This document shows positions 24,717 through 35,345 of a stretch of DNA of 64,000 bases, piece after piece. Source of the DNA: Macrostomum hystrix. Lineage: Eukaryota > Animalia > Platyhelminthes. Below the pieces are notes generated by a model, which did not search any database, was not told where the DNA came from, and saw nothing but the letters and a program-made list of their open reading frames with translations. The translations under genes were made by a program, and so were the position numbers. The stretch lies in assembly GCA_950097015.1 (NCBI GenBank), contig CATNEN010000030.1, positions 1,922,001 to 1,986,000 on the forward strand. The letters run 5' to 3'. Position 1 is the stretch's first letter. Every line of letters begins with the position of its first letter.

Positions 24717-26652
24717 GATTCTCATAAGACAACTCGTACCTTCAGATACTCGCCTTATCTCGGGTCGTGTTAGTTACAATGGCTTTGAAGCTTGCAGTTT
24801 GACTGCGTTGTTGTTCTCTGTGCATGTTAGGCCTAGTTCTATTACTTTAATAGTCATCCTTCCTTTTCGTTGAGTGATATGCCTTTTGTCTCCTGCTCAT
24901 CTATTTGTATGATTTGCGTCAAATACATTTTAGCGAGTTTTGCGAATTTCGATATATATTTTATATTTGTACTTTCTCTGGCACACAACACTAACAGCGT
25001 ACTTTTCGCTATGCCTACATAGTTTTCTGTAATCATCAGATTGTGGTCACGAATTATATAATACAAGCCATGAAAATACGAAGTAGTTCCGATTTTGTGA
25101 AAAAAATGTTTTTTTGAATGCATCAACCATGGCAGCAGCTTAGAAATTTAGCGCCAGTCTATTCTAGTCTATTCTGTTATGAGAATAGACTAGAAACAGA
25201 AACAGAAAATCTAAAATAAGTCTTAAATTTCCATTCAGCTTTAAAATGTGGCAGCGCGGACATGCCAAAAGCAATATTTTTTGTTTTATTCGGCAATTTT
25301 TCTGTCACAAACTGGTATGTACGACTTATAATAGTTCTGATTGTGGGACAATTTGGACAATGCACCAAGGCTAAACAAAGATCATTGCTTTATTGCACCT
25401 AAGAGAAATTGCACTGATCAGCAACGGGTGAGCTGATTCCAATATCCTAACGATTGTTAAGGATTTTCTCAGCCGCCATCAACCCATCCAAGGTAGGCGA
25501 CAATAAAGGGTGACAGCCACCTCGGTACGTCATTCACAGAGAAACAATTCAGCATTGCTAGCTTAGGACTAAGGATAATGGAGAAAAGTAGCAAAAAAGT
25601 AAACCGATTAAGCGCAAAGCCGGTGGCCAAAGAAGACAAAAAGAAGCAGTACAGAAGTAAAGTAAAGGTTATGATGTACCTGGACTGCACATTGACATTT
25701 AACACCAATATTTTTGGCTTTAACTTAGACACAAAACAACAGTTACAGAAGAACAACAAGTGTGTTATTACTAAACACATCCCCTGTTTAGCAATAGGAA
25801 AGAATATGATGGACACCTTATAGTCAGAAGTTTTAAAACTTAGATAACAATCTCCTATCTATAATAATTTGAGCACGTGACGCTTCTCATCCAATAAAGT
25901 TCAGAGATTAGGATTAGTAGTTTAGATTCAAAGCCCTAAATTTGTTAAAAGGAATTCATTTTAATTTCCAAAAAAGACAAGAAAAGCTGATTAGATATAA
26001 CAGCTGCGTGACAATTCCCCAAATCTAGCATTTCGTTGTAAAATAATTTTTTTTTCTCAAACATTTGCCAAAAAGGAGCGACGAATTAAAAATTGAGGAA
26101 AAATTCAGTTGGGAGAATAATTGTGTTCACGTTTGTGTAATCCGAGATGGGCCTCTAGAAGACCAATCAAATCGACAACAACAAGGCTAGGCAAAATGCG
26201 TAACTACTCAATAACAGCAAGAGTACACATTTTTGGGAGAGAAATAGAGAATAGAGAAGGTATTGATTGCGCAATACACGGTGGCCTATTGAAGCAAAAA
26301 TGTGGGTTAAGCGGACAGACACTTCTAAATCAGTAAAAGAACATATCGAATTAACGACAGACAATTCACACAGTGACCTAACTGTAAAATGTTAATGAGT
26401 GCTTTGGTGGCTACTGCATTAGTAGTAGTAGTAGGATAGACGATTTGCAATATTTTTTGCTAGTTTTTTTAATAAAAGTGTGAAATATTTACGTTTCCTC
26501 TGAGTGTTTGCCACATATTGCTTTCCTCACCAACGTGCGCTATAGCACTCACTAGACCATGGGCTGACGGACTGCAATCGTACGCTCGTAATATCGATTA
26601 AATGATCACTAACTTTCTCACTGACGTCACTTTCAACAAACCAGATAGCTGA

Positions 26653-29600
26653 TTAGGCGGCCGCCTTGTTGGACTCCATCGCCACCATGACGACATCGTT
26701 TCCAACCTTCTCTGACGACTTCTCTCCGTTGGCGTCGGCTGACGCGGCAGCGGCAGCGGCGCCGTCGACACCGCCTTCGACCGCCAGCTGCTTCTGCTGC
26801 TTCAGATCGTCGGCGCACATGAAGTGCGTGAAGGCGGCGCAGTACAGGTGCGACAGGCCGATCGAGCCCGAGCGCATGCGGTCGCTGAAGTTTGTGAGTT
26901 GAAAAATTTGCAAATATTCAAGAAATAAATAAACTACACTGTCTATGGTTAAATTGCCATTCTTTTAATGCATTAACTAATTTCGCGCCCGCTGTCTGCT
27001 TTTGCAGAGTTGCTTTTGCTTTTTCTGTGGACGAAGGAGCGAAGCCCCCTCATTTCAACCATAGACAAAATGGCTCGAGTAAAAGAACAGACAATCTAAT
27101 ATAGCTTTTTTCAGCCTATTTGGGCTTACGCGCATTTAATTTAATCCGGGATATGTTTGTCAATGTAACTGAGCTTTAGTCTGTGGTCACAAGGGTGGCG
27201 CAGCAGCATTTAATTTAGTCCAAGAAGCATCAATTTGGTCCATAGCGGCTCTCTAACTTCAGTCCTAGATTTTTAATCGATTTAGAATTAACATGACGGA
27301 CACAAGCAGTGAGGACGAAAGCAATTCTTCATTTGCAACTGCTGCGGAGGAACAAGATCAGCCCCAGAATCGTGGACCATATGCTAGACTATCGAATGAG
27401 CGCCACGGACTTGTGATCGAAGCACTCGACAGAGGTGAACACCCAAATGACATTGCAAGGTTGCTGAATGTCAAAGAAAAGACTATTTATAGCATCCGTC
27501 AGCGGGTTGAAACTACTGGCAGAAGAGATCGTCTGCGAAGGGGCGGCAACCGCCAAAGCAAGTTGTTGGAGCCTCAGGTCCAACTGCTACTAGATGCAAT
27601 TGAAGCAAACCCTCTGTTGACGTTGCAGCAAATGCAGCAGAAGTTGAACCAACAGTTTCAGTTGGTTGTCAGCATTTCGACTATCAGCAGAGCTCTGGAA
27701 AAGCGACTGATAACACTGAAAATTCTTGGAAGAGACGCTGACATTCCAATGGTACGCAACAGCCATCAGACGGTTGCGAGAAGGCAGGAATTTGCTGAAT
27801 GGCTAACGGCTCTTGACCCTGCGGTTCATCTGGTTTATCTAGACGAGACTGGATTCAACATTTGGACTCGAAGAACGCAAGGTCGTGGTCGCCGAGGTCA
27901 GCGCATACGGCGCACCGTTCATTCTCAGCGGGGTCATCAAGTGAATGTACTGCAAGCAATTTCACCAACCATCGGACTTGTCTACCACAAAGTTGTGAGC
28001 CAGACTATGACCGCAGATCTGTTTCAGCAGTGCATTAATGAGCTGGTGCAGTCTCTACTTGAAGTTCATGGACTGGATGCCCAACAGCAGGTGCGCATCA
28101 TTATGGATGGTGCGCGGTTTCATAATGGAGCCCGGATGCCAGAAGTACATCAGGACAGGATCCAGCTCATTCAATTGCCACCATACTCTCCGTTTCTGAA
28201 TCCCGTTGAGGCTGCCCATTCCTGCCTGAAGTCTGTAATCAAGCAGGAGCTCAGTGACCCGACCACCCAACTAGAGCTGGACCAACCGCCTCCTAACACC
28301 ACCCTTGGCCAATGGCGAGTACTGGTACTACACCGCATTGCCGAGGCCGCTACAGCCTCCATCACACCTTTGAAGTGTGCGGGTTGGTACCGGCAGATGC
28401 TGCGCTTCATGCCTGCTTGCATGACAGGAGAAAATGTAAATTAAACTCGCTTTCGTCTTCTTCAGCGATGTTTTGACAATTAGAAAATTATTGTTTGTTC
28501 TTGCAATATTTCAGCAAATTCCAGTTGTTATTTTTCCTGGCGTTTTTAAATGGAAAGTTGCTTAAATAAACTGCATTACAAAGTTGTAACTCGTGATTAG
28601 GTTTCGTTGGACCTATGGACCAAATTGATGCTTGTTGGACTAAATTAAATGCTGCTGCGCCACCCTTGTGACCACAGACTAAAGCTCAGTTACTTTGAAA
28701 AACATATCCCGGATTAAATTGAATGCACGTAAGCCCAAATGGGCTGAAAAAAGCTATATATAATATATAAGCTTGCATGCTGAGAATTTTCTGCGCAATC
28801 TTGGGCTATAAAGGTATCGTACAAGCCATAGACATCTTGGAGTTGGATAACTCACAGCAGCCAGTCCACAGCGTAGAGCAGCCCAACCTCAGTCTCGGAG
28901 ATGCCAACCGATGTCAGAATGGTGACTAGGATCACCAGACTAGCCGAGGGGATGTTTGGCAGGGCTAGCATTGCGGACGACACCAGCAGGACGATGACAA
29001 CGATGGTGCCGACGGTAACATTGTAGCTAGTCATCTGGGCGAGGAACACGGCGGCCACAGCGATGAAGCAAGCGCTGCCGTCGCCTTTGATCGCGGCGGC
29101 GAACGGGATGACGAAGCGCGAGACCTCCTGCCTGAGGCCGTAGCGGTCGCAGCATTCGATCATCTCCGGGATGGCGACGACACTGAGGAGGGGTGAATTT
29201 TGTTAAGCGTTTTTTTCGATTTCGATTTCTTGATTTGCCAACCAGTTAAGCACGTGTGCTTGATTTTCACTCACGGCGCTGTGGTGGCAAACGAGATGAA
29301 CCAGGAGCGCACGGTATTGGGCAGGAAGTAGATCGGATTCTTCCTGGACACCACAATGAACACCACCTGCAGCAGGATGAAGTGCACGCCCAGCCCGACT
29401 GTCACGCTCAGGATGAAGAGGCTCAGCTTCATGAAGGTGCCCCAGGGATCCACGATGGACACCACCGAAGCGGCGATCATGAAACAGACGCCAGGCGGCG
29501 TCAGCCTTGAATTGCGGGGGACGGAACCGCTATACAATCTGCGTTGACAAACTTATACGGATTGCGGGCCAGGTTTATATAGACAATAGCGGATGGATGA

Positions 29601-32600
29601 CCAGTAATGATAAGACGAGAGATGAGACAGGGGAGAGACGAAACAGGAGAATGATGAGACACAGGAGAGATGAGACTCGGAGAGATAAGTCATGAGAAGA
29701 TAAGAAATTTTGGAGACAAAACATTGGAGTGTTTGAAGGGTCCAGTAGGTTAGATTTAGGGTTGGCGAGTTGGCGAGTGTTTATGGAAATTACCTAAATT
29801 GCTAAAACATGCTACTGGCTTCACTAATCAGTAGAGAAGTTAGAATACGACGAACTAAATAAGTCAAGCCTCACCAGATGAACCAGCGCATCACTTTGAT
29901 CACCACGTGGGACAACGACTGGAAGAAGGCGATGAAAGGCTTGCCCTGCTCGCCAGTGGTGCGGGCAGCCATGCCGAACACGGCAGCGCAGAAGATCACG
30001 CCAATCATGTTCACAGAGGAAGAATTCGTCATGATTCTTTCGTCGATAATGCTAGTAGAATTGTCCAGCAGGCCCAGTTCGGCTAGCTTGCCCTTCAGCG
30101 GCACGCTGTACACAGTCTGAGTTTTGTACAGGGCCACGCCCACCAGATTGTCCGGGAAGATATTGAACAGTAGATCGGCGAACACGTCCGACGAAGTCAG
30201 CTTGGCAATCTTGGGCCCAACTGTGCCGTTGCCGGCTTGCGTTGGGGCTCGGTTGATGCCTGGCAACACGGCCGAGATGCAAGCAATGTGTTTGGCTCAG
30301 CACTCACTTTGCATGGCCCGTTCCGAAAATATCTTCCGTGTCTTATATCTCCTGTGTGTCATCTCTTCCGTGTCTCATCTCTCCTGTGTCTCATCTCTCC
30401 TGTCTCAGCTCTCCCGTGTCTCATCTCTCCCGTGTCTCATCTCTTCTTTGTCTCATCTCTCCCGTGTCTCATCTCTTCTGTGTCTCATCTCTCCTGTGTC
30501 TCATCTCTCCTGTCTCATCTCTTCTGTGTCTCATCTCTCGTGTCTTATCTCTGCTGTGTCTCATCTCTCCCGTGTCTCATCTCTCCTGTGTCTCATCTCT
30601 CCTGTCTCAGCTCTCCCCTGTCTCATCTCTTCTTTGTCTCATCTCTCCCGTGTCTCATCTCTTCTGTGTCTCATCTCTCCCGTGTCTCATCTCTCCTGTC
30701 TCTCATCTCTCCCGTGTCTCAGCTCTCCCGTGTCTCTTCTCTCCTGTCTCAGCTCTCCTTGTCTCATCTCTCCCGTGTCTCATCTCTCCTGTCTCATCTC
30801 TCCCGTGTCTCATCTCTCCTGTCTCATCTCTCCCGTGTCTCATCTCTCCCGTGTCTCATCTCTTCTTTGTCTCATCTCTCCCGTGTCTCATCTCTCCTGT
30901 GTCTCATCTCTCCTGTGTCTCATCTCTTCTGTGTCTCATCTCTCGTGTCTTATCTCTGCTGTGTCTCATCTCTCCCGTGTCTCATCTCTCCTGTCTCAGC
31001 TCTCCCCTGTCTCATCTCTTCTTTGTCTCATCTCTCCCGTGTCTCATCTCTTCTGTGTCTCATCTCTCCCGTGTCTCATCTCTCCTGTCTCTCATCTCTC
31101 CCGTGTCTCATATCTCCCGTGTCTCAGCTCTCCCGTGTCTCTTCTCTCCTGTCTCAGCTCTCCTTGTCTCATCTCTCCCGTGTCTCATCTCTCCTGTCTC
31201 ATCTCTCCTGTGTCTCATCTCTTCTTTGTCTCATCTCTCCCGTGTCTCATCTCTCCTGTCTCATCTCTCCCGTGTCTCATCTCTCCTGTTTCGCATCTCT
31301 CCAGTGTCTCATCTCTCCCGTGTCTCATCTCTTCTTTGTCTCATCTCTCCCGTGTCTCATCTCTCCTGTGTCTCATCTCTCCTGTGTCTCATCTCTTCTG
31401 TGTCTCATCTCTCGTGTCTTATCTCTGCTGTGTCTCATCTCTCCTGTGTCTCATCTCTCCTGTCTCATCTCTTCTGTGTCTCATCTCTCGTGTCTTATCT
31501 CTCCTGTGTCTCATCTCTCCTGTGTCTCATCTCTTCTGTGTCTCATCTCTCGTGTCTTATCTCTGCTGTGTCTCATCTCTCCCGTGTCTCATCTCTCCTG
31601 TCTCATCTCTTCTGTGTCTCATCTCTCGTGTCTTATCTCTCCTGTGTCTCATCTCTCCTGTGTCTCATCTCTTCTGTGTCTCATCTCTCGTGTCTTATCT
31701 CTGCTGTGTCTCATCTCTCCTGTGTCTCATCTCTCCCGTGTCTCATCTCTCCTGTCTCTCATCTCTTCCGTGTCTCATCTCTTCCGTGTCTCATCTCTTC
31801 CGTGTCTCAGTTCTCCCTTTCTCAGCTCTCCCCTGTCTCATCTCTCCCGTGTCTCATCTCTCCTGTGTCTCATCTCTCCCGTGTCTCATCTCTCCCGTGT
31901 CTTATCTCTTCTGTGTCTCATCTCTCCAATGTCTAATCTCTATCGTATCTTTTTCCCCATCTCTACCTTGTTTCATCGCTCCTGTGTCATCACACATGTG
32001 TCTCATCTCTCCACATGTACTATGTGCGTGCATTGTTAGCATTTTACATAGAGTTATTTGTTATTTTCTAGTCCCCAGTTTAAAGTCGCAAGGGTCGCCT
32101 TTAGCCCCTGCAAAAGACCCTGGGTGAACATAGTTCAGAATTAGGCACCTCGACACTTCCTAACCCAACTGGAAATTCTTTTAGTCCTGATAAGAGAACC
32201 GGTTTATCTGACCCGAACACAGCTCTCTGTCTAATATTAGCTGGCACTGAGAATATGACAGCCGCACCGGAACAGGACAAGCGGTCTGGCGGGTTTTTAA
32301 CACTTTTTATCATTTCGCTAATAACTTTTGGCATGCAAGGGCATCGTGCTACTGTGAACACAGTTGTAATGGTAGCGCTAAATAATTAACCACCTCTTCT
32401 CACCTGCAGCTTAATTATGAGTGCCAGAATGCAACCCTACCCGCCTCTTTACACCTGACTTACTTAGCTGAGTGCTAGAAGGCAACCCTATCCCACCCCT
32501 TCTCACCTGACTTAATTAGCTGAGTGGTAGAAGGCAACATATGCCGCCTCTTCACACCTGGATTAAATATGAGTGCCAGAATGCAACCCTACCCCGCCTC

Positions 32601-33370
32601 TTTACACCTGACTTAATTATGAGTGCCAGAATGCAACCCTACCCCGCCTCTTTACACCTGGCTTAATTAGCTGAGTGGTAGAAGGCAACCTATCCCGCCT
32701 CTTCACACCTGGATTAAATATGAGCGCTAGAAGGCAACCCTAACCCACCCCTTTTCCCCTCACCTGGCCTAATGATGAGCGCTGTCAGGCAGCCAATCAG
32801 AGCCGATCCAACGTTGGCCACGATGATGTAGCCAAATGAGACCAGGCTGATCTTGCCATTCACCTTGGGATCCAGGTTCGCTGAGACTGCAAAAAATAGT
32901 AGGGGTTTCCGAATTTGTTTTTCTTGCCACTATCCTAGAAATTGAATGTCTATAATATGCTTCAAATCAACTTACCAACAACAACATTGGCGGCAATCAG
33001 TGGCAAAATGGTCAGTTTTAGCAGTCGGATAAATATTTCACCTGGCATGCCTGGAATGAGAATCAGCCAATGGCGTCACAAGTGCGTCGTCTTGTTCTAG
33101 AGCGTGAATAAATCAAGCTCGCTAAAAGGACTCACTCAGCCAAAGCAGGAACTGTGAGGTCCTGTCCTCTTCGGCGACTGCCAGCCGGATGATCAGGCCG
33201 ATAAAGAAGCCTAGAAGTACGCCACCGATGGTGCCAATCATGAACATGTTGTCCTTTACGAACTTGACCGCCTTCTGGCACCTGGTGAGCTGAACTATCT
33301 GCATCTCCGGCTCCAGGAGACCCTCGGCCTCCTTTGTTTCAGCATTCTTCTTCTCGTCGGTTGTTGACAT
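26653..33370 (-). CDS. Divergent SLC1 (EAAT/ASCT/GltP-fold) transporter; exons 33370-33136, 33050-32976, 32886-32764, 30259-29875, 29505-29275, 29182-28856, 26884-26653
   Basis: All six introns are GT-AG with consistent phases. SLC1 hallmarks: MPGEIFIRLLKLTILPL, LIIRPG, DLLFNIFPDNLV, NMIGVIFCAAVFG, VSRFVIPFAAAIKGDGSA, IPSASLV, VDWLLDRMRS. Confidence 0.95.
27102..28756 (+). mobile_element. Full-length IS630-Tc1-mariner superfamily DNA transposon in SLC1 intron 6
   Basis: 144-bp TIRs (27102-27245 and 28613-28756) with 6 mismatches, flanked by TA; encloses one intact ORF. Confidence 0.95.
27293..28444 (+). CDS. DDE transposase (IS630/Tc1-like, DD33E spacing), 383 aa
   Basis: Two HTH-like N-terminal segments; catalytic motifs YLDETG, IMDGARFH and LPPYSPFLNPVE; 33 residues between the second D and the E. 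Confidence 0.95.
   Translation: MTDTSSEDESNSSFATAAEEQDQPQNRGPYARLSNERHGLVIEALDRGEHPNDIARLLNVKEKTIYSIRQRVETTGRRDRLRRGGNRQSKLLEPQVQLLLDAIEANPLLTLQQMQQKLNQQFQLVVSISTISRALEKRLITLKILGRDADIPMVRNSHQTVARRQEFAEWLTALDPAVHLVYLDETGFNIWTRRTQGRGRRGQRIRRTVHSQRGHQVNVLQAISPTIGLVYHKVVSQTMTADLFQQCINELVQSLLEVHGLDAQQQVRIIMDGARFHNGARMPEVHQDRIQLIQLPPYSPFLNPVEAAHSCLKSVIKQELSDPTTQLELDQPPPNTTLGQWRVLVLHRIAEAATASITPLKCAGWYRQMLRFMPACMTGENVN
30325..31935. repeat. CT-rich minisatellite (gtctcatctctcc(c/t)gt) in SLC1 intron 3
   Basis: Tandem 14-18 bp units; source of the spurious 500-670 aa ORFs. Confidence 0.97.
32395..32765. repeat. ~50-bp minisatellite overlapping the SLC1 exon 3 donor
   Basis: On the - strand each unit carries (c/t)cag|gtg and resembles the exon end ctcatcattaggccag|gtgagg. 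Confidence 0.88.
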
Positions 33371-33415: not shown

Positions 33416-35345
33416 GACCGACATGTTAGACAGGCAACGGACATGTCTGATAGGAGACCGACATGTTTGAAAGGAGAGACCGACATGTTTGATAGGAGAG
33501 ACCGACATGTTTGATAGGAGAGACCGGCATGTCTGATAGGAGAGACCGACATGTCTGATAGGAGAACGACATTTTTGATAGGAGAGACCGACATGTTTGA
33601 TAGGAGAGACCGACATGTTTGATAGGAGACCGACATGTCTGATAGGAGAGACCGACATGTTTGATAGGAGACCGACATGTCTGATAGGAGAGACCGACAT
33701 GTCTGATAGGAGACCGACATGTCTGATAGGAGACCGAAATGTCTGATAGGAGACCGACATGTCTGATAGGAGAGACCGACATGTCTGATAGGAGACCGAC
33801 ATGTCTGATAGGAGACCGACATGTTTGATAGGAGAGACCGACATGTTTGATAGGAGAGACCGACATGTTTGATAGGAGAGACCGACATGTTTGATAGGAG
33901 ACCGACATGTTTGATAGGAGAGACCGACATGTTTGATAGGAGAGACCGACATGTCTGATAGGAGAGACCGATATGTCTGATAGGAGAGACCGACATGTTT
34001 GATAGTAGAGACCGACATGTCTGATAGGAGAGACCGATATGTCTGATAGGAGAGACCGACATGTCTGATAGGAGAGACCGACATGTTTGATAGGAGACCG
34101 ACATGTCCGATAGGAGACCGACATGTCTGATAGGAGAGACCGACATGTCTGATAGGAGACCGACATGTCTGATAGGAGAGACCGACATGTCTGATAGGAG
34201 ACCGACATGTCTGATAGGAGACCGACATGTTTGATAGGAGAGACCGACATGTTTGATAGGAGAGACCGACATGTTTAATAGGAGACCGACATGTTTGATA
34301 GGAGAGACCGACATGTTTGATAGGAGAGACCGACATGTCTGATAGGAGAGACCGATATGTCTGATAGGAGACCGACATGTCTGATAGGAGATCGACATGT
34401 CTGATAGGAGACCGACATGTCTGATAGGAGACCGACATGTTTGATAGGAGAGACCGACATGTCTGATAGGAGAGACCGACATGTCTGATAGGAGAGACCG
34501 ACATGTCTGATAGGAGACCGACATGTTTGATAGGAGACCGACATGTCTGATAGGAGACCGATATGTTTGATAGGAGACCGACATGTTTGATAGGAGAGAC
34601 CGACATGTCTGATAGGAGACCGACATGTTTGATAGGAGACCGACATGTCTGATAGGAGAGACCGACATGTCTGATAGGAGACCGACATGTCTGATAGGAG
34701 AGACCGACATGTTTGATAGGAGAGACCGACATGTTTGATAGGAGAGACCGACATGTCTGATAGGAGACCGACATGTTTGATAGGAGACCGACATGTCTGA
34801 TGGGAGACCGACATGTCTGATAGGAGACCGACATGTTTGATAGGAGAGACCGACATGTCTGATAGGAGAGACCGACATGTCTGATAGGAGACCGACATGT
34901 CTGATAGGAGACCGACATGTTTGATAGGAGAGACCGACATGTCTGATAGGAGAGACCGACATGTTTGATAGTAGAGACCGACATGTTTGATAGTAGACCG
35001 ACATGTCTTAATGGAGAGACCGACATGTCTGATAGGAGAGACCGACATGTTTGATAGGAGAGACCGACATGTTTGATAGGAGACCGACATGTCTGATAGG
35101 AGAGACCGACATGTTTGATAGGAGAGACCGACATGTCTGATAGGAGAGACCGACATGTTTGATAGGAGAGACCGACATGTTTGATAGGAGAGACCGACAT
35201 GTTTGATAGGAGACCGACATGTCTGATAGGAGACCGGCATGTCTGATAGGAGACCGACATGTTTGATAGGAGACCGACATGTCTGATAGGAGACCGGCAT
35301 GTCTGATAGGAGACCGACATGTCTGATAGGAGACCGACATGTTCG
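33416..35345. repeat. 20/22-bp minisatellite (gaccgacatgtctgataggaga)
   Basis: About 90 units; ends ~30 bp before the putative acceptor (33387-33386) preceding the SLC1 ATG. Confidence 0.97.

What the first reader, a model, noticed from the sequence alone, without database searches (positions are those of the whole stretch)
26653..33370. SLC1-fold transporter with a rewired ion and substrate core: NMDGT becomes KGDGS
Seen in the spliced protein, using GltPh numbering by motif alignment: TM7 N310-M311-D312-G-T314 reads K-G-D-G-S. The Na3 ligands in TM3 change (Y89->I, T92->A, S93->N). Na1 Asp405 is His and substrate-binding Asn401 is Ile (DRMRSGSIGLSH versus DRLRTTTNVLGD). The HP1 serine motif is TTAPVVA, HP2 AAGIPQAG is LPNIPSAS, and the EAAT proton-accepting Glu (LYEA) is Ile. 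D394 and R397, which recognise the amino group and acidic side chain, are kept, and the ORF and splice sites are intact. Inference: a lysine may act as a built-in cation at the Na3 site, as basic residues do in Na+-independent LeuT-fold carriers such as ApcT and CaiT. That would give a Na+-independent or differently coupled carrier, a new substrate, or a channel/sensor. I know of no functionally characterised SLC1 with this signature; related sequences may exist in other invertebrates.
Basis: partly seen in the sequence, partly recalled or inferred. Interest (0 to 1): 0.78.

Follow-up and report, generated by a model that had tools for sequence, protein, structure and literature searches.

The report
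Flatworm SLC1 transporter with lysine core
An intact, expressed flatworm gene encodes a glutamate-transporter-family protein in which most sodium-binding residues are replaced, including a lysine where a key asparagine should be; a whole flatworm-only branch of the family shares this, so it probably works without sodium, which nobody has tested.

Summary
A 7-exon, 535-aa SLC1 (Pfam SDF) gene lies on the minus strand at 33370-26653, and every intron is GT-AG. Gapless alignments to GltPh and EAAT structures put K-G-D-G-S on N310-M311-D312-G-T314. They also give I/A/N on Y89/T92/S93, and Ile and His on N401 and D405. D394 and R397 are kept.

The gene is not decaying. Spliced contigs in four public runs use exactly the predicted junctions. 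The Macrostomum lignano orthologue (80% identity) has the same exon structure, and dN/dS is 0.13-0.17. An AlphaFold model of that orthologue is a complete inward-facing SLC1 fold, with TM7 still broken at K-G.

Lys310 marks a well-supported flatworm-only clade (Macrostomum, cestodes, a monogenean). In that group D312 is invariant (34/34), T92 is never kept (0/21) and N401 is mostly lost. The clade nests in a wider, uncharacterised subfamily without D405, found in molluscs, a brachiopod, a nemertean, a hemichordate and trematodes.

The likeliest function is a Na+-independent carrier. The idea that the lysine acts as a tethered cation in Na3 is plausible but untested, because no model coordinates were available.

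The scan has also noted another altered SLC1 gene elsewhere in this genome (s1-268124).

The parts
33136..33370 (-). Exon 1: ATG at 33370, N-terminal tail and TM1
   Evidence: gene model. The N-terminus aligns with M. lignano P0152.
32976..33050 (-). Exon 2 (TM2, ...LKLTILPLIAANVVV)
   Evidence: It has the same 75-nt length as the M. lignano exon.
32764..32886 (-). Exon 3 (TM3)
   Evidence: The loose end of the spliced contigs at 30264 reads into this exon's last bases.
32813..32830 (-). Codons Y123-I-I-V-A-N128, equivalent to GltPh Y88-Y89-L-L-T92-S93 (Na3 ligands changed)
   Evidence: Gapless alignment to GltPh 47-111; codons read.
29875..30259 (-). Exon 4 (TM3-4 loop, TM4, TM5)
   Evidence: Pfam SDF 1.3e-11. 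Spliced contigs end and join here.
29275..29505 (-). Exon 5 (TM6 and HP1a; HP1 motif ATTAP)
   Evidence: Pfam SDF. Joints 29504/29874 and 29182/29275 are seen in 3-4 runs.
28856..29182 (-). Exon 6 (HP1b, TM7, HP2)
   Evidence: Pfam SDF 5e-23; EAAT1 1e-18.
29074..29088 (-). Codons K382-G-D-G-S386 in place of N310-M311-D312-G-T314
   Evidence: Gapless alignment to GltPh and EAAT1. The AAA GGC GAC GGC AGC codons were read.
28939..28962 (-). HP2 tip LPNIPSAS (residues 424-431) in place of AAGIPQAG
26653..26884 (-). Exon 7 (TM8, C-terminal tail, TAA stop at 26655-26653)
   Evidence: The joint 26884/28856 is seen in three runs.
26848..26883 (-). Codons D460-R-M-R-S-G-S-I-G-L-S-H471. D394 and R397 are kept, N401 is Ile and D405 is His.
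   Evidence: Gapless alignment to EAAT2 TM8.

Best explanation
This is a functional, transcribed gene of a macrostomid flatworm. It encodes a member of a flatworm-specific branch of the SLC1 (glutamate/neutral amino-acid transporter, Pfam SDF) family.

The elevator fold, both re-entrant hairpins, the unwound break in TM7, and the two residues that recognise the amino group and the acidic side chain of the substrate (the D394 and R397 equivalents) are all kept. The side-chain ligands of Na1 (D405 to His) and Na3 (T92 to Ala, S93 to Asn, N310 to Lys), the Na2 methionine (M311 to Gly) and the EAAT proton-acceptor Glu (to Ile) are replaced.

The most likely consequence, which is inferred and not shown, is a carrier for an amino-acid-like anion whose substrate binding and translocation no longer depend on Na+. 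It would act as an exchanger or facilitator, or be H+-modulated through the His. On this reading Lys382 pairs with the invariant Asp384 and holds the TM7 loop permanently in the 'ion-bound' configuration that Na1 and Na3 normally induce.
For: Shown:
- The gene is an intact 7-exon GT-AG model.
- Spliced contigs with zero mismatches in runs X5 and X6, and also in X1 and X2 (two studies), use the predicted junctions.
- The M. lignano orthologue is 80% identical, has identical internal exon lengths, and gives dN/dS 0.17 overall and 0.13 in the core at dS about 0.7.
- Motif equivalences come from gapless alignments.
- The AF2 model of the orthologue has pLDDT 84 and pTM 0.82, and its TM7 helix breaks at K-G. 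It matches ASCT2 and EAAT3 inward-facing structures with TM-scores up to 0.95.
- The K310 clade has 15 of 15 rows from flatworms, with UFBoot 100 / SH-aLRT 98 with the motif columns dropped.
- Among K310 proteins D312 is kept in 34/34, T92 in 0/21, N401 in 5/23, D405 in 0/22, D394 in 22/24 and R397 in 22/23. Canonical proteins keep all of these in more than 90% of cases.

Literature: the Na+ signature and the existence of a cation-independent SLC1 exchanger that reaches the high-affinity state without Na+ are described in PMC12668577.
Against: There is no functional assay of any member of this clade. No model coordinates were available, so the position of the Lys amine is unknown. Na2 is built mostly from backbone carbonyls and could survive. 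D312 is retained and could still bind a cation. Most of the K310 covariation comes from one ancient origin, so the counts are not independent events. Two further K310 sequences that fall outside the flatworm clade on long branches (Saccoglossus P0022 and the unnamed P0082) keep N401.
Confidence: 0.5

Rival explanations
1. It is still a cation-coupled symporter with a remodelled or reduced set of sites, for example Na2 alone, or a cation held by Asp384, Asn128 and His471. Lys382 would play a structural or pKa-tuning role.
For: D312 is invariant in all 34 K310 proteins and N93 is present in 19/21, so polar ligands remain in the Na3 pocket. Na2 is mainly backbone-coordinated (established knowledge from GltPh and GltTk structures).
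Against: Five of the six signature positions fail the published Na+ signature. The Na2 methionine is Gly/Ala/Ser in 32/34 K310 proteins. A lysine next to the aspartate leaves little room or charge for another cation.
Confidence: 0.2
2. The lysine reshapes the substrate site rather than an ion site. It would compensate for the lost N401 by contacting a substrate carboxylate, so the main novelty would be a new substrate.
For: N401, an alpha-carboxylate ligand, is lost specifically in the K310 group (5/23 keep it, against 23/25 in the sister divergent group and 61/65 in canonical proteins). The HP1 and HP2 tips are also rewritten.
Against: In solved structures the N310 side chain points into the buried Na3 pocket between TM3 and TM7, away from the substrate (established knowledge). 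T92, a pure Na3 ligand, is lost at the same time (0/21), which points to the ion site.
Confidence: 0.15
3. It no longer transports and instead serves as an anion channel, sensor or regulatory subunit.
For: Many core ligands are changed. EAATs have an intrinsic anion conductance (established knowledge).
Against: D394 and R397 are conserved across the subfamily. The transport domain is under strong purifying selection. The complete elevator fold is predicted. Cestodes, which lack a gut, keep several paralogues.
Confidence: 0.12
4. It is a decaying or relaxed paralogue whose odd residues are drift.
For: None beyond the unusual residues themselves.
Against: The ORF and splice sites are intact and the gene is spliced in RNA-derived contigs. 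dN/dS is 0.13-0.17. All motif segments are identical between two Macrostomum species, and the K is conserved as far as cestodes and a monogenean.
Confidence: 0.02

Closest known systems
Macrostomum lignano BOX15_Mlig028619g1 (P0152; UniProt name 'Amino acid transporter', uncharacterised)
   Same: It is 80% identical over 535 aa, has the same 7-exon structure and has identical TM3, HP1, TM7, HP2 and TM8 motifs.
   Different: It comes from a different species or genome record. The tails diverge (dN/dS 0.29 there). It is only an automatic annotation.
Animal EAAT1-5 / ASCT1-2 (SLC1A1-7)
   Same: It shares the Pfam family and the fold (TM-score up to 0.95 to ASCT2 and 0.93 to EAAT3 inward-facing). 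D394 and R397 are kept as in EAATs, and TM7 is broken at the motif.
   Different: NMDGT is KGDGS. T92, S93, N401, D405 and the proton-acceptor Glu are replaced. The HP1 serine motif and the glycine-rich HP2 tip are rewritten. Identity is about 28-30%.
Wider D405-less invertebrate SLC1 subfamily (molluscs, Lingula, Tubulanus, Saccoglossus, trematodes, M. lignano Mlig003570), annotated 'EAAT-like' or 'neutral amino acid transporter A-like'
   Same: The shared hallmarks are N at position 93, [ILV]P.[IV]PS[AS]S in HP2, F-[IV] instead of Y-E, and S-H instead of G-D in TM8. The group is monophyletic with SH-aLRT 100.
   Different: These proteins mostly keep T92 (11/16) and N401 (23/25). At position 310 they have N, S, Q or G, often with Arg or Lys at 311 (15/29), rather than Lys at 310.
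Bacterial H+-coupled GltP/GltT and the cation-independent ancestral exchanger AncInt (PMC12668577)
   Same: They are precedents for SLC1 members that have lost Na+ coupling through changes at positions 92, 311 and 405. Here position 92 is Ala, which matches the H+ signature.
   Different: The H+ signature has L311 and N405; this protein has G311 and H405. None of those proteins has a basic residue at 310. The origin here is eukaryotic and independent.
LeuT-fold ApcT (Lys158) and CaiT (Arg262)
   Same: This is an analogy only: a basic side chain occupies a former Na+ site in a Na+-independent carrier (established knowledge, recalled, not tested here).
   Different: The fold and family are unrelated. 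The analogy is a hypothesis for this protein.

Membership tests
SLC1 / SDF family (Pfam PF00375) | Significant match to the SDF profile | tested here: met
   Exons 4, 5 and 6 score 44.7, 28.2 and 82.1 bits against a cut-off of 27.9. All relatives carry PF00375.
SLC1 / SDF family (Pfam PF00375) | Eight TM helices plus two re-entrant hairpins, forming an elevator fold | tested here: met
   AF2 model of the 80%-identical orthologue: pLDDT 84, with TM-score 0.95 to ASCT2 8oui_B and 0.93 to EAAT3. The window protein itself could not be submitted because it is spliced.
SLC1 / SDF family (Pfam PF00375) | Conserved N-M-D-G-T motif in unwound TM7 | tested here: not met
   The motif reads K-G-D-G-S. The helix break is retained at K-G in the model.
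Na+-coupled glutamate/aspartate transporters (GltPh / EAAT type) | Na+-site signature [S/T]92-93, N310, [M/S]311, [D/E]312, [D/E]405 (PMC12668577) | tested here: not met
   The residues are A92, N93, K310, G311, D312 and H405, so only D312 is kept.
Na+-coupled glutamate/aspartate transporters (GltPh / EAAT type) | Substrate ligands D394, R397, T398 and N401 | tested here: inconclusive
   D and R are kept, T398 is Ser and N401 is Ile.
EAAT subtype (H+ co-transport, K+ counter-transport) | Proton-acceptor Glu (EAAT3 E374) in TM7b | tested here: not met
   It is Ile (CFIA against LYEA). In K310 proteins it is I in 29/34.
Bacterial H+-coupled GltP/GltT type | Signature [A/L/I/V/M/F]92, L311, N405 (PMC12668577) | tested here: not met
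   A92 fits, but position 311 is Gly and 405 is His.
ASCT-type neutral amino-acid exchangers | R397/R447 replaced by Thr or Cys | tested here: not met
   Arg is retained, in 22/23 K310 proteins.
Flatworm K310 SLC1 clade (defined here) | K at 310 with D at 312, non-Thr at 92, N at 93 and no Asp at 405; groups with Macrostomum, cestode and monogenean sequences | tested here: met
Any transporter class | Measured substrate and ion dependence | not testable with these tools
   This needs uptake or electrophysiology assays.

The most novel reading that the evidence does not exclude
Lys382 is a tethered cation that permanently fills the Na3 site by pairing with Asp384. This would make the flatworm clade the first natural SLC1 (elevator-type) carriers in which a protein side chain replaces a coupling ion. 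The clade would then be a eukaryotic, independently evolved Na+-independent glutamate-transporter homologue, absent from vertebrates and present in several copies in tapeworms.
Probability: 0.35. Interest if true: 0.8.

Novelty: new variant of a known kind. Interest (0 to 1): 0.62.

Why it matters
How SLC1 transporters couple substrate to three Na+ ions through the N-M-D loop is a central question in the field. So far, natural uncoupled or re-coupled variants have been analysed only in bacteria (PMC12668577).

This clade is an ancient, selectively maintained animal variant. In it the loop asparagine is a lysine, its aspartate partner is invariant, and the other Na1 and Na3 ligands have been released from constraint. 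That makes it a ready-made natural experiment for testing whether a tethered charge can replace Na1/Na3.

The clade also has several copies in tapeworms, which take up nutrients through their surface. In the look-ups made here it was not found in vertebrates, so it may have parasitological interest.

Tried and rejected
- **Exon 7 against the PDB:** it found only noise because of its short TM8 and low-complexity tail. I used P0152:425-495 instead.
- **Pfam on exons 1, 3 and 7:** no hits, because the pieces are too short.
- **Spliced protein as a query:** the 535-aa protein has no single reference, so it could not be given to the structure or database tools. I used exon 6 for the exhaustive HMMER search and the orthologue P0152 for the fold.
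- **Paper searches:**
  - The first search was too broad, because 'SLC1' also matched SLC10 and higher-numbered families.
  - Searches for flatworm or cestode glutamate transporters, ApGT2, Echinococcus 'neutral amino acid transporter' and Lophotrochozoa SLC1 clades found no description of this clade.
  - A cestode tegument proteomics preprint does not mention such transporters in its main text.
- **Pseudogene reading:** rejected.
- **Tandem paralogue in the window:** none found.
- **Canonical NMDGT paralogues in the same genome:** I did not test whether any exist.
Full report
**Observation.** The minus strand between 33370 and 26653 carries seven exons: 33370-33136, 33050-32976, 32886-32764, 30259-29875, 29505-29275, 29182-28856 and 26884-26653. 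All have canonical GT..AG borders. They join into a 1608-nt CDS that encodes 535 aa with a single terminal stop. Pfam's SDF model (PF00375) matches exons 4, 5 and 6. The window holds no second SLC1 copy.

**Residue equivalences.** I did not rely on recalled motif alignments.
- Exon 6 aligns without gaps to GltPh (query 5-101 against chain 283-379) and to EAAT1. This puts Lys382, Gly383, Asp384 and Ser386 on N310, M311, D312 and T314, and Phe-Ile on the Tyr-Glu that includes the EAAT proton acceptor.
- TM3 aligns without gaps to GltPh 47-111, giving YYLLTS to YIIVAN, i.e. Y89I, T92A and S93N.
- TM8 aligns without gaps to EAAT2, giving DRMRTSVNVVGD to DRMRSGSIGLSH. D394 and R397 are kept, N401 is Ile and D405 is His.
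- The TM3 and TM8 alignments used the orthologue P0152, whose motifs are identical to the window protein.
- HP1 reads ATTAPVVA and HP2 reads LPNIPSAS.

**Is the gene alive?** Contigs from four public runs in two studies were laid on 26640-30300.
- They skip exactly 26885-28855, 29183-29274 and 29505/6-29874. These are CT..AC on the plus strand, i.e. GT..AG on the gene's strand.
- Beyond 30264 they continue into the last bases of exon 3.
- Two of the runs match with no mismatches.
- The runs' library type is not on record, but intron-less joins at the predicted sites are what mRNA-derived contigs give.

The closest database protein is Macrostomum lignano BOX15_Mlig028619g1 (P0152, 535 aa, 80% identity over the full length). 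A paralogue, Mlig022109g1, is 66% identical. I rebuilt the M. lignano CDS from its contig. It has seven exons, and its internal exon lengths (75, 123, 385, 231, 327) are identical to those in the window. Nei-Gojobori dN/dS between the two genes is 0.17 overall and 0.13 for residues 35-480, at dS about 0.7. Every motif segment is identical between them. The decay hypothesis is refuted. The window comes from a macrostomid flatworm that is not identical to the M. lignano record; an earlier scan note on this genome says the same.

**Relatives.** An exhaustive HMMER search with exon 6 against 1.84 billion cluster representatives gave 2073 hits. The top hits carry KGDGS, KADGS, KSDGS or KKDGS. Next come NRDGS, NADGS, QADGS, SANGS and similar forms. 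Canonical NMDGT appears only from about rank 28. The source names are as follows:
- The K310 proteins come from Macrostomum, cestodes (Schistocephalus, Spirometra, Dibothriocephalus, Mesocestoides, Hymenolepis, Rodentolepis, Anoplocephala, Hydatigera, Echinococcus) and a monogenean (Cichlidogyrus).
- The other divergent forms come from gastropods, bivalves, a chiton, Lingula, the nemertean Tubulanus, trematodes (Clonorchis, Opisthorchis), another M. lignano paralogue and the hemichordate Saccoglossus (KKDGS).

All of these are automatic annotations such as 'Amino acid transporter', 'EAAT-like' or 'neutral amino acid transporter A'.

**Phylogeny.** In maximum-likelihood trees rooted on bacterial homologues, all divergent sequences form one clade (SH-aLRT 100, stem 0.7). 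An ostracod NMDGT protein is its sister. Within that clade, 15 of 15 flatworm K310 sequences form a clade with UFBoot 100 / SH-aLRT 98, even when the TM7 motif columns are removed. Two other K310 sequences lie elsewhere on long branches: Saccoglossus P0022 and an unnamed ENA protein, P0082. Lys therefore arose at least once deep in flatworms, before Macrostomorpha and Neodermata split. It may have arisen again elsewhere.

**Site pattern.**

| Position | K310 group (34 sequences) | Other divergent group | Canonical proteins |
|---|---|---|---|
| T92 | Thr in 0/21 (A, S, M, F, Y, I, V, K) | Thr in 11/16 | 36/37 |
| 93 | Asn in 19/21 | Asn in 12/16 | Ser or Thr in 35/37 |
| 311 | Gly/Ala/Ser in 32/34 | Arg or Lys in 15/29 | Met in 82/82 |
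| D312 | 34/34 | 17/29 | 82/82 |
| D394 | 22/24 | 25/25 | 61/70 |
| R397 | 22/23 | 23/25 | 57/69 |
| N401 | 5/23 | 23/25 | 61/65 |
| D405 | 0/22 (His in 10) | 0/25 (His in 17) | 62/64 |

Loss of D405 (Na1), Asn at 93 and loss of the proton-acceptor Glu are therefore hallmarks of the whole subfamily. The flatworm branch adds three things: K310, strict retention of D312, and release of T92 and N401 from constraint. That pattern is what one expects if the Lys-Asp pair took over the role of Na3 and, with it, the ion-dependent shaping of the substrate site. Most of it traces to one origin, however, so the counts are not independent events.

**Fold.** An AlphaFold2 model of P0152, built with a 55-sequence alignment, has mean pLDDT 83.9 and pTM 0.82. 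TM7 is broken at residues 383-384, which are the K-G of that protein, and both hairpins are present. Foldseek places the model on inward-facing ASCT2, EAAT2 and EAAT3 structures, with target TM-scores of 0.95 to 8oui_B and 0.93 to EAAT3 inward-facing entries. The tool returns no coordinates, so the key geometric test, whether the Lys amine sits in Na3, could not be run.

**Mechanism.**
- *Published background:* Na+-site residues are defined as [S/T]92-93, N310, [M/S]311, [D/E]312 and [D/E]405. The signature of bacterial H+-coupled members is [A/L/I/V/M/F]92, L311 and N405. A reconstructed ancestral intermediate (AncInt) is a cation-independent exchanger that reaches the high-affinity, 'NMD flipped-in' state without Na+ (PMC12668577).
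- *This protein:* it keeps one of the six Na+ positions and matches only A92 of the H+ signature.
- *My best reading (confidence about 0.5):* it is a Na+-independent carrier for an amino-acid-like anion, since D394 and R397 are kept. It would act as an exchanger or facilitator, or be modulated by pH through His471. Lys382 paired with Asp384 would hold the TM7 loop in the bound-like state.
- *Rivals:* residual cation coupling through remodelled sites (0.2), Lys acting on the substrate pocket with a new substrate (0.15), and a non-transport role (0.12). Decay is excluded.

**Novelty.** The proteins are already in the databases, but I found no paper that describes or characterises this clade or a Lys at position 310. 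The library lacks most subscription journals, so this absence is weak evidence. I class the finding as a new variant of a known kind. Another note of this scan (s1-268124) reports an SLC1-fold gene with altered coupling residues elsewhere in the same genome. It is probably one of the paralogues seen in M. lignano; I did not examine it.

Noticed in passing
window 27099-28759 (intron 6 of the SLC1 gene): A DNA transposon with 147-nt terminal inverted repeats (96% complementary) flanks an intact 383-aa transposase ORF (27293-28444, plus strand). The ORF has DDE_3 and HTH domains and is Tc1/mariner-like. Contigs in public runs match parts of it with a few differences and indels, so other copies exist.
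   Followed up: partly
window 32393-32800 (exon 3 end and start of intron 3): The last roughly 35 nt of exon 3 plus its donor site form the first unit of a tandem array of about 50-nt units (about 7 copies, 76% mean column identity). Every copy keeps a CAGGTG donor-like site. The spliced contigs use the genuine exon copy. This resembles another note on this genome about an intron made of copies of an exon end plus a donor (s1-258439).
   Followed up: partly
window 30332-31941 and 33440-35342: There are two long satellite arrays. One has a 16-nt unit in about 103 copies inside intron 3. The other has a 22-nt unit in about 90 copies and ends only about 70 nt upstream of the ATG, which leaves very little unique 5' flank. 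An AG about 15 nt upstream of the ATG could be a trans-splice acceptor; this was not tested.
   Followed up: no
window below 26640 (3' of the gene): One spliced contig of run X5 (1721 nt) runs about 1.4 kb beyond the stop-codon region. This suggests a long 3' UTR or read-through into downstream sequence.
   Followed up: no
proteins P0021, P0024, P0027, P0068, P0133 (molluscs and relatives): Many non-flatworm members of the D405-less subfamily have Arg or Lys at the M311 position (N-R-D-G-S; 15 of 29). A basic residue in the TM7 loop therefore recurs at either of two adjacent positions.
   Followed up: partly
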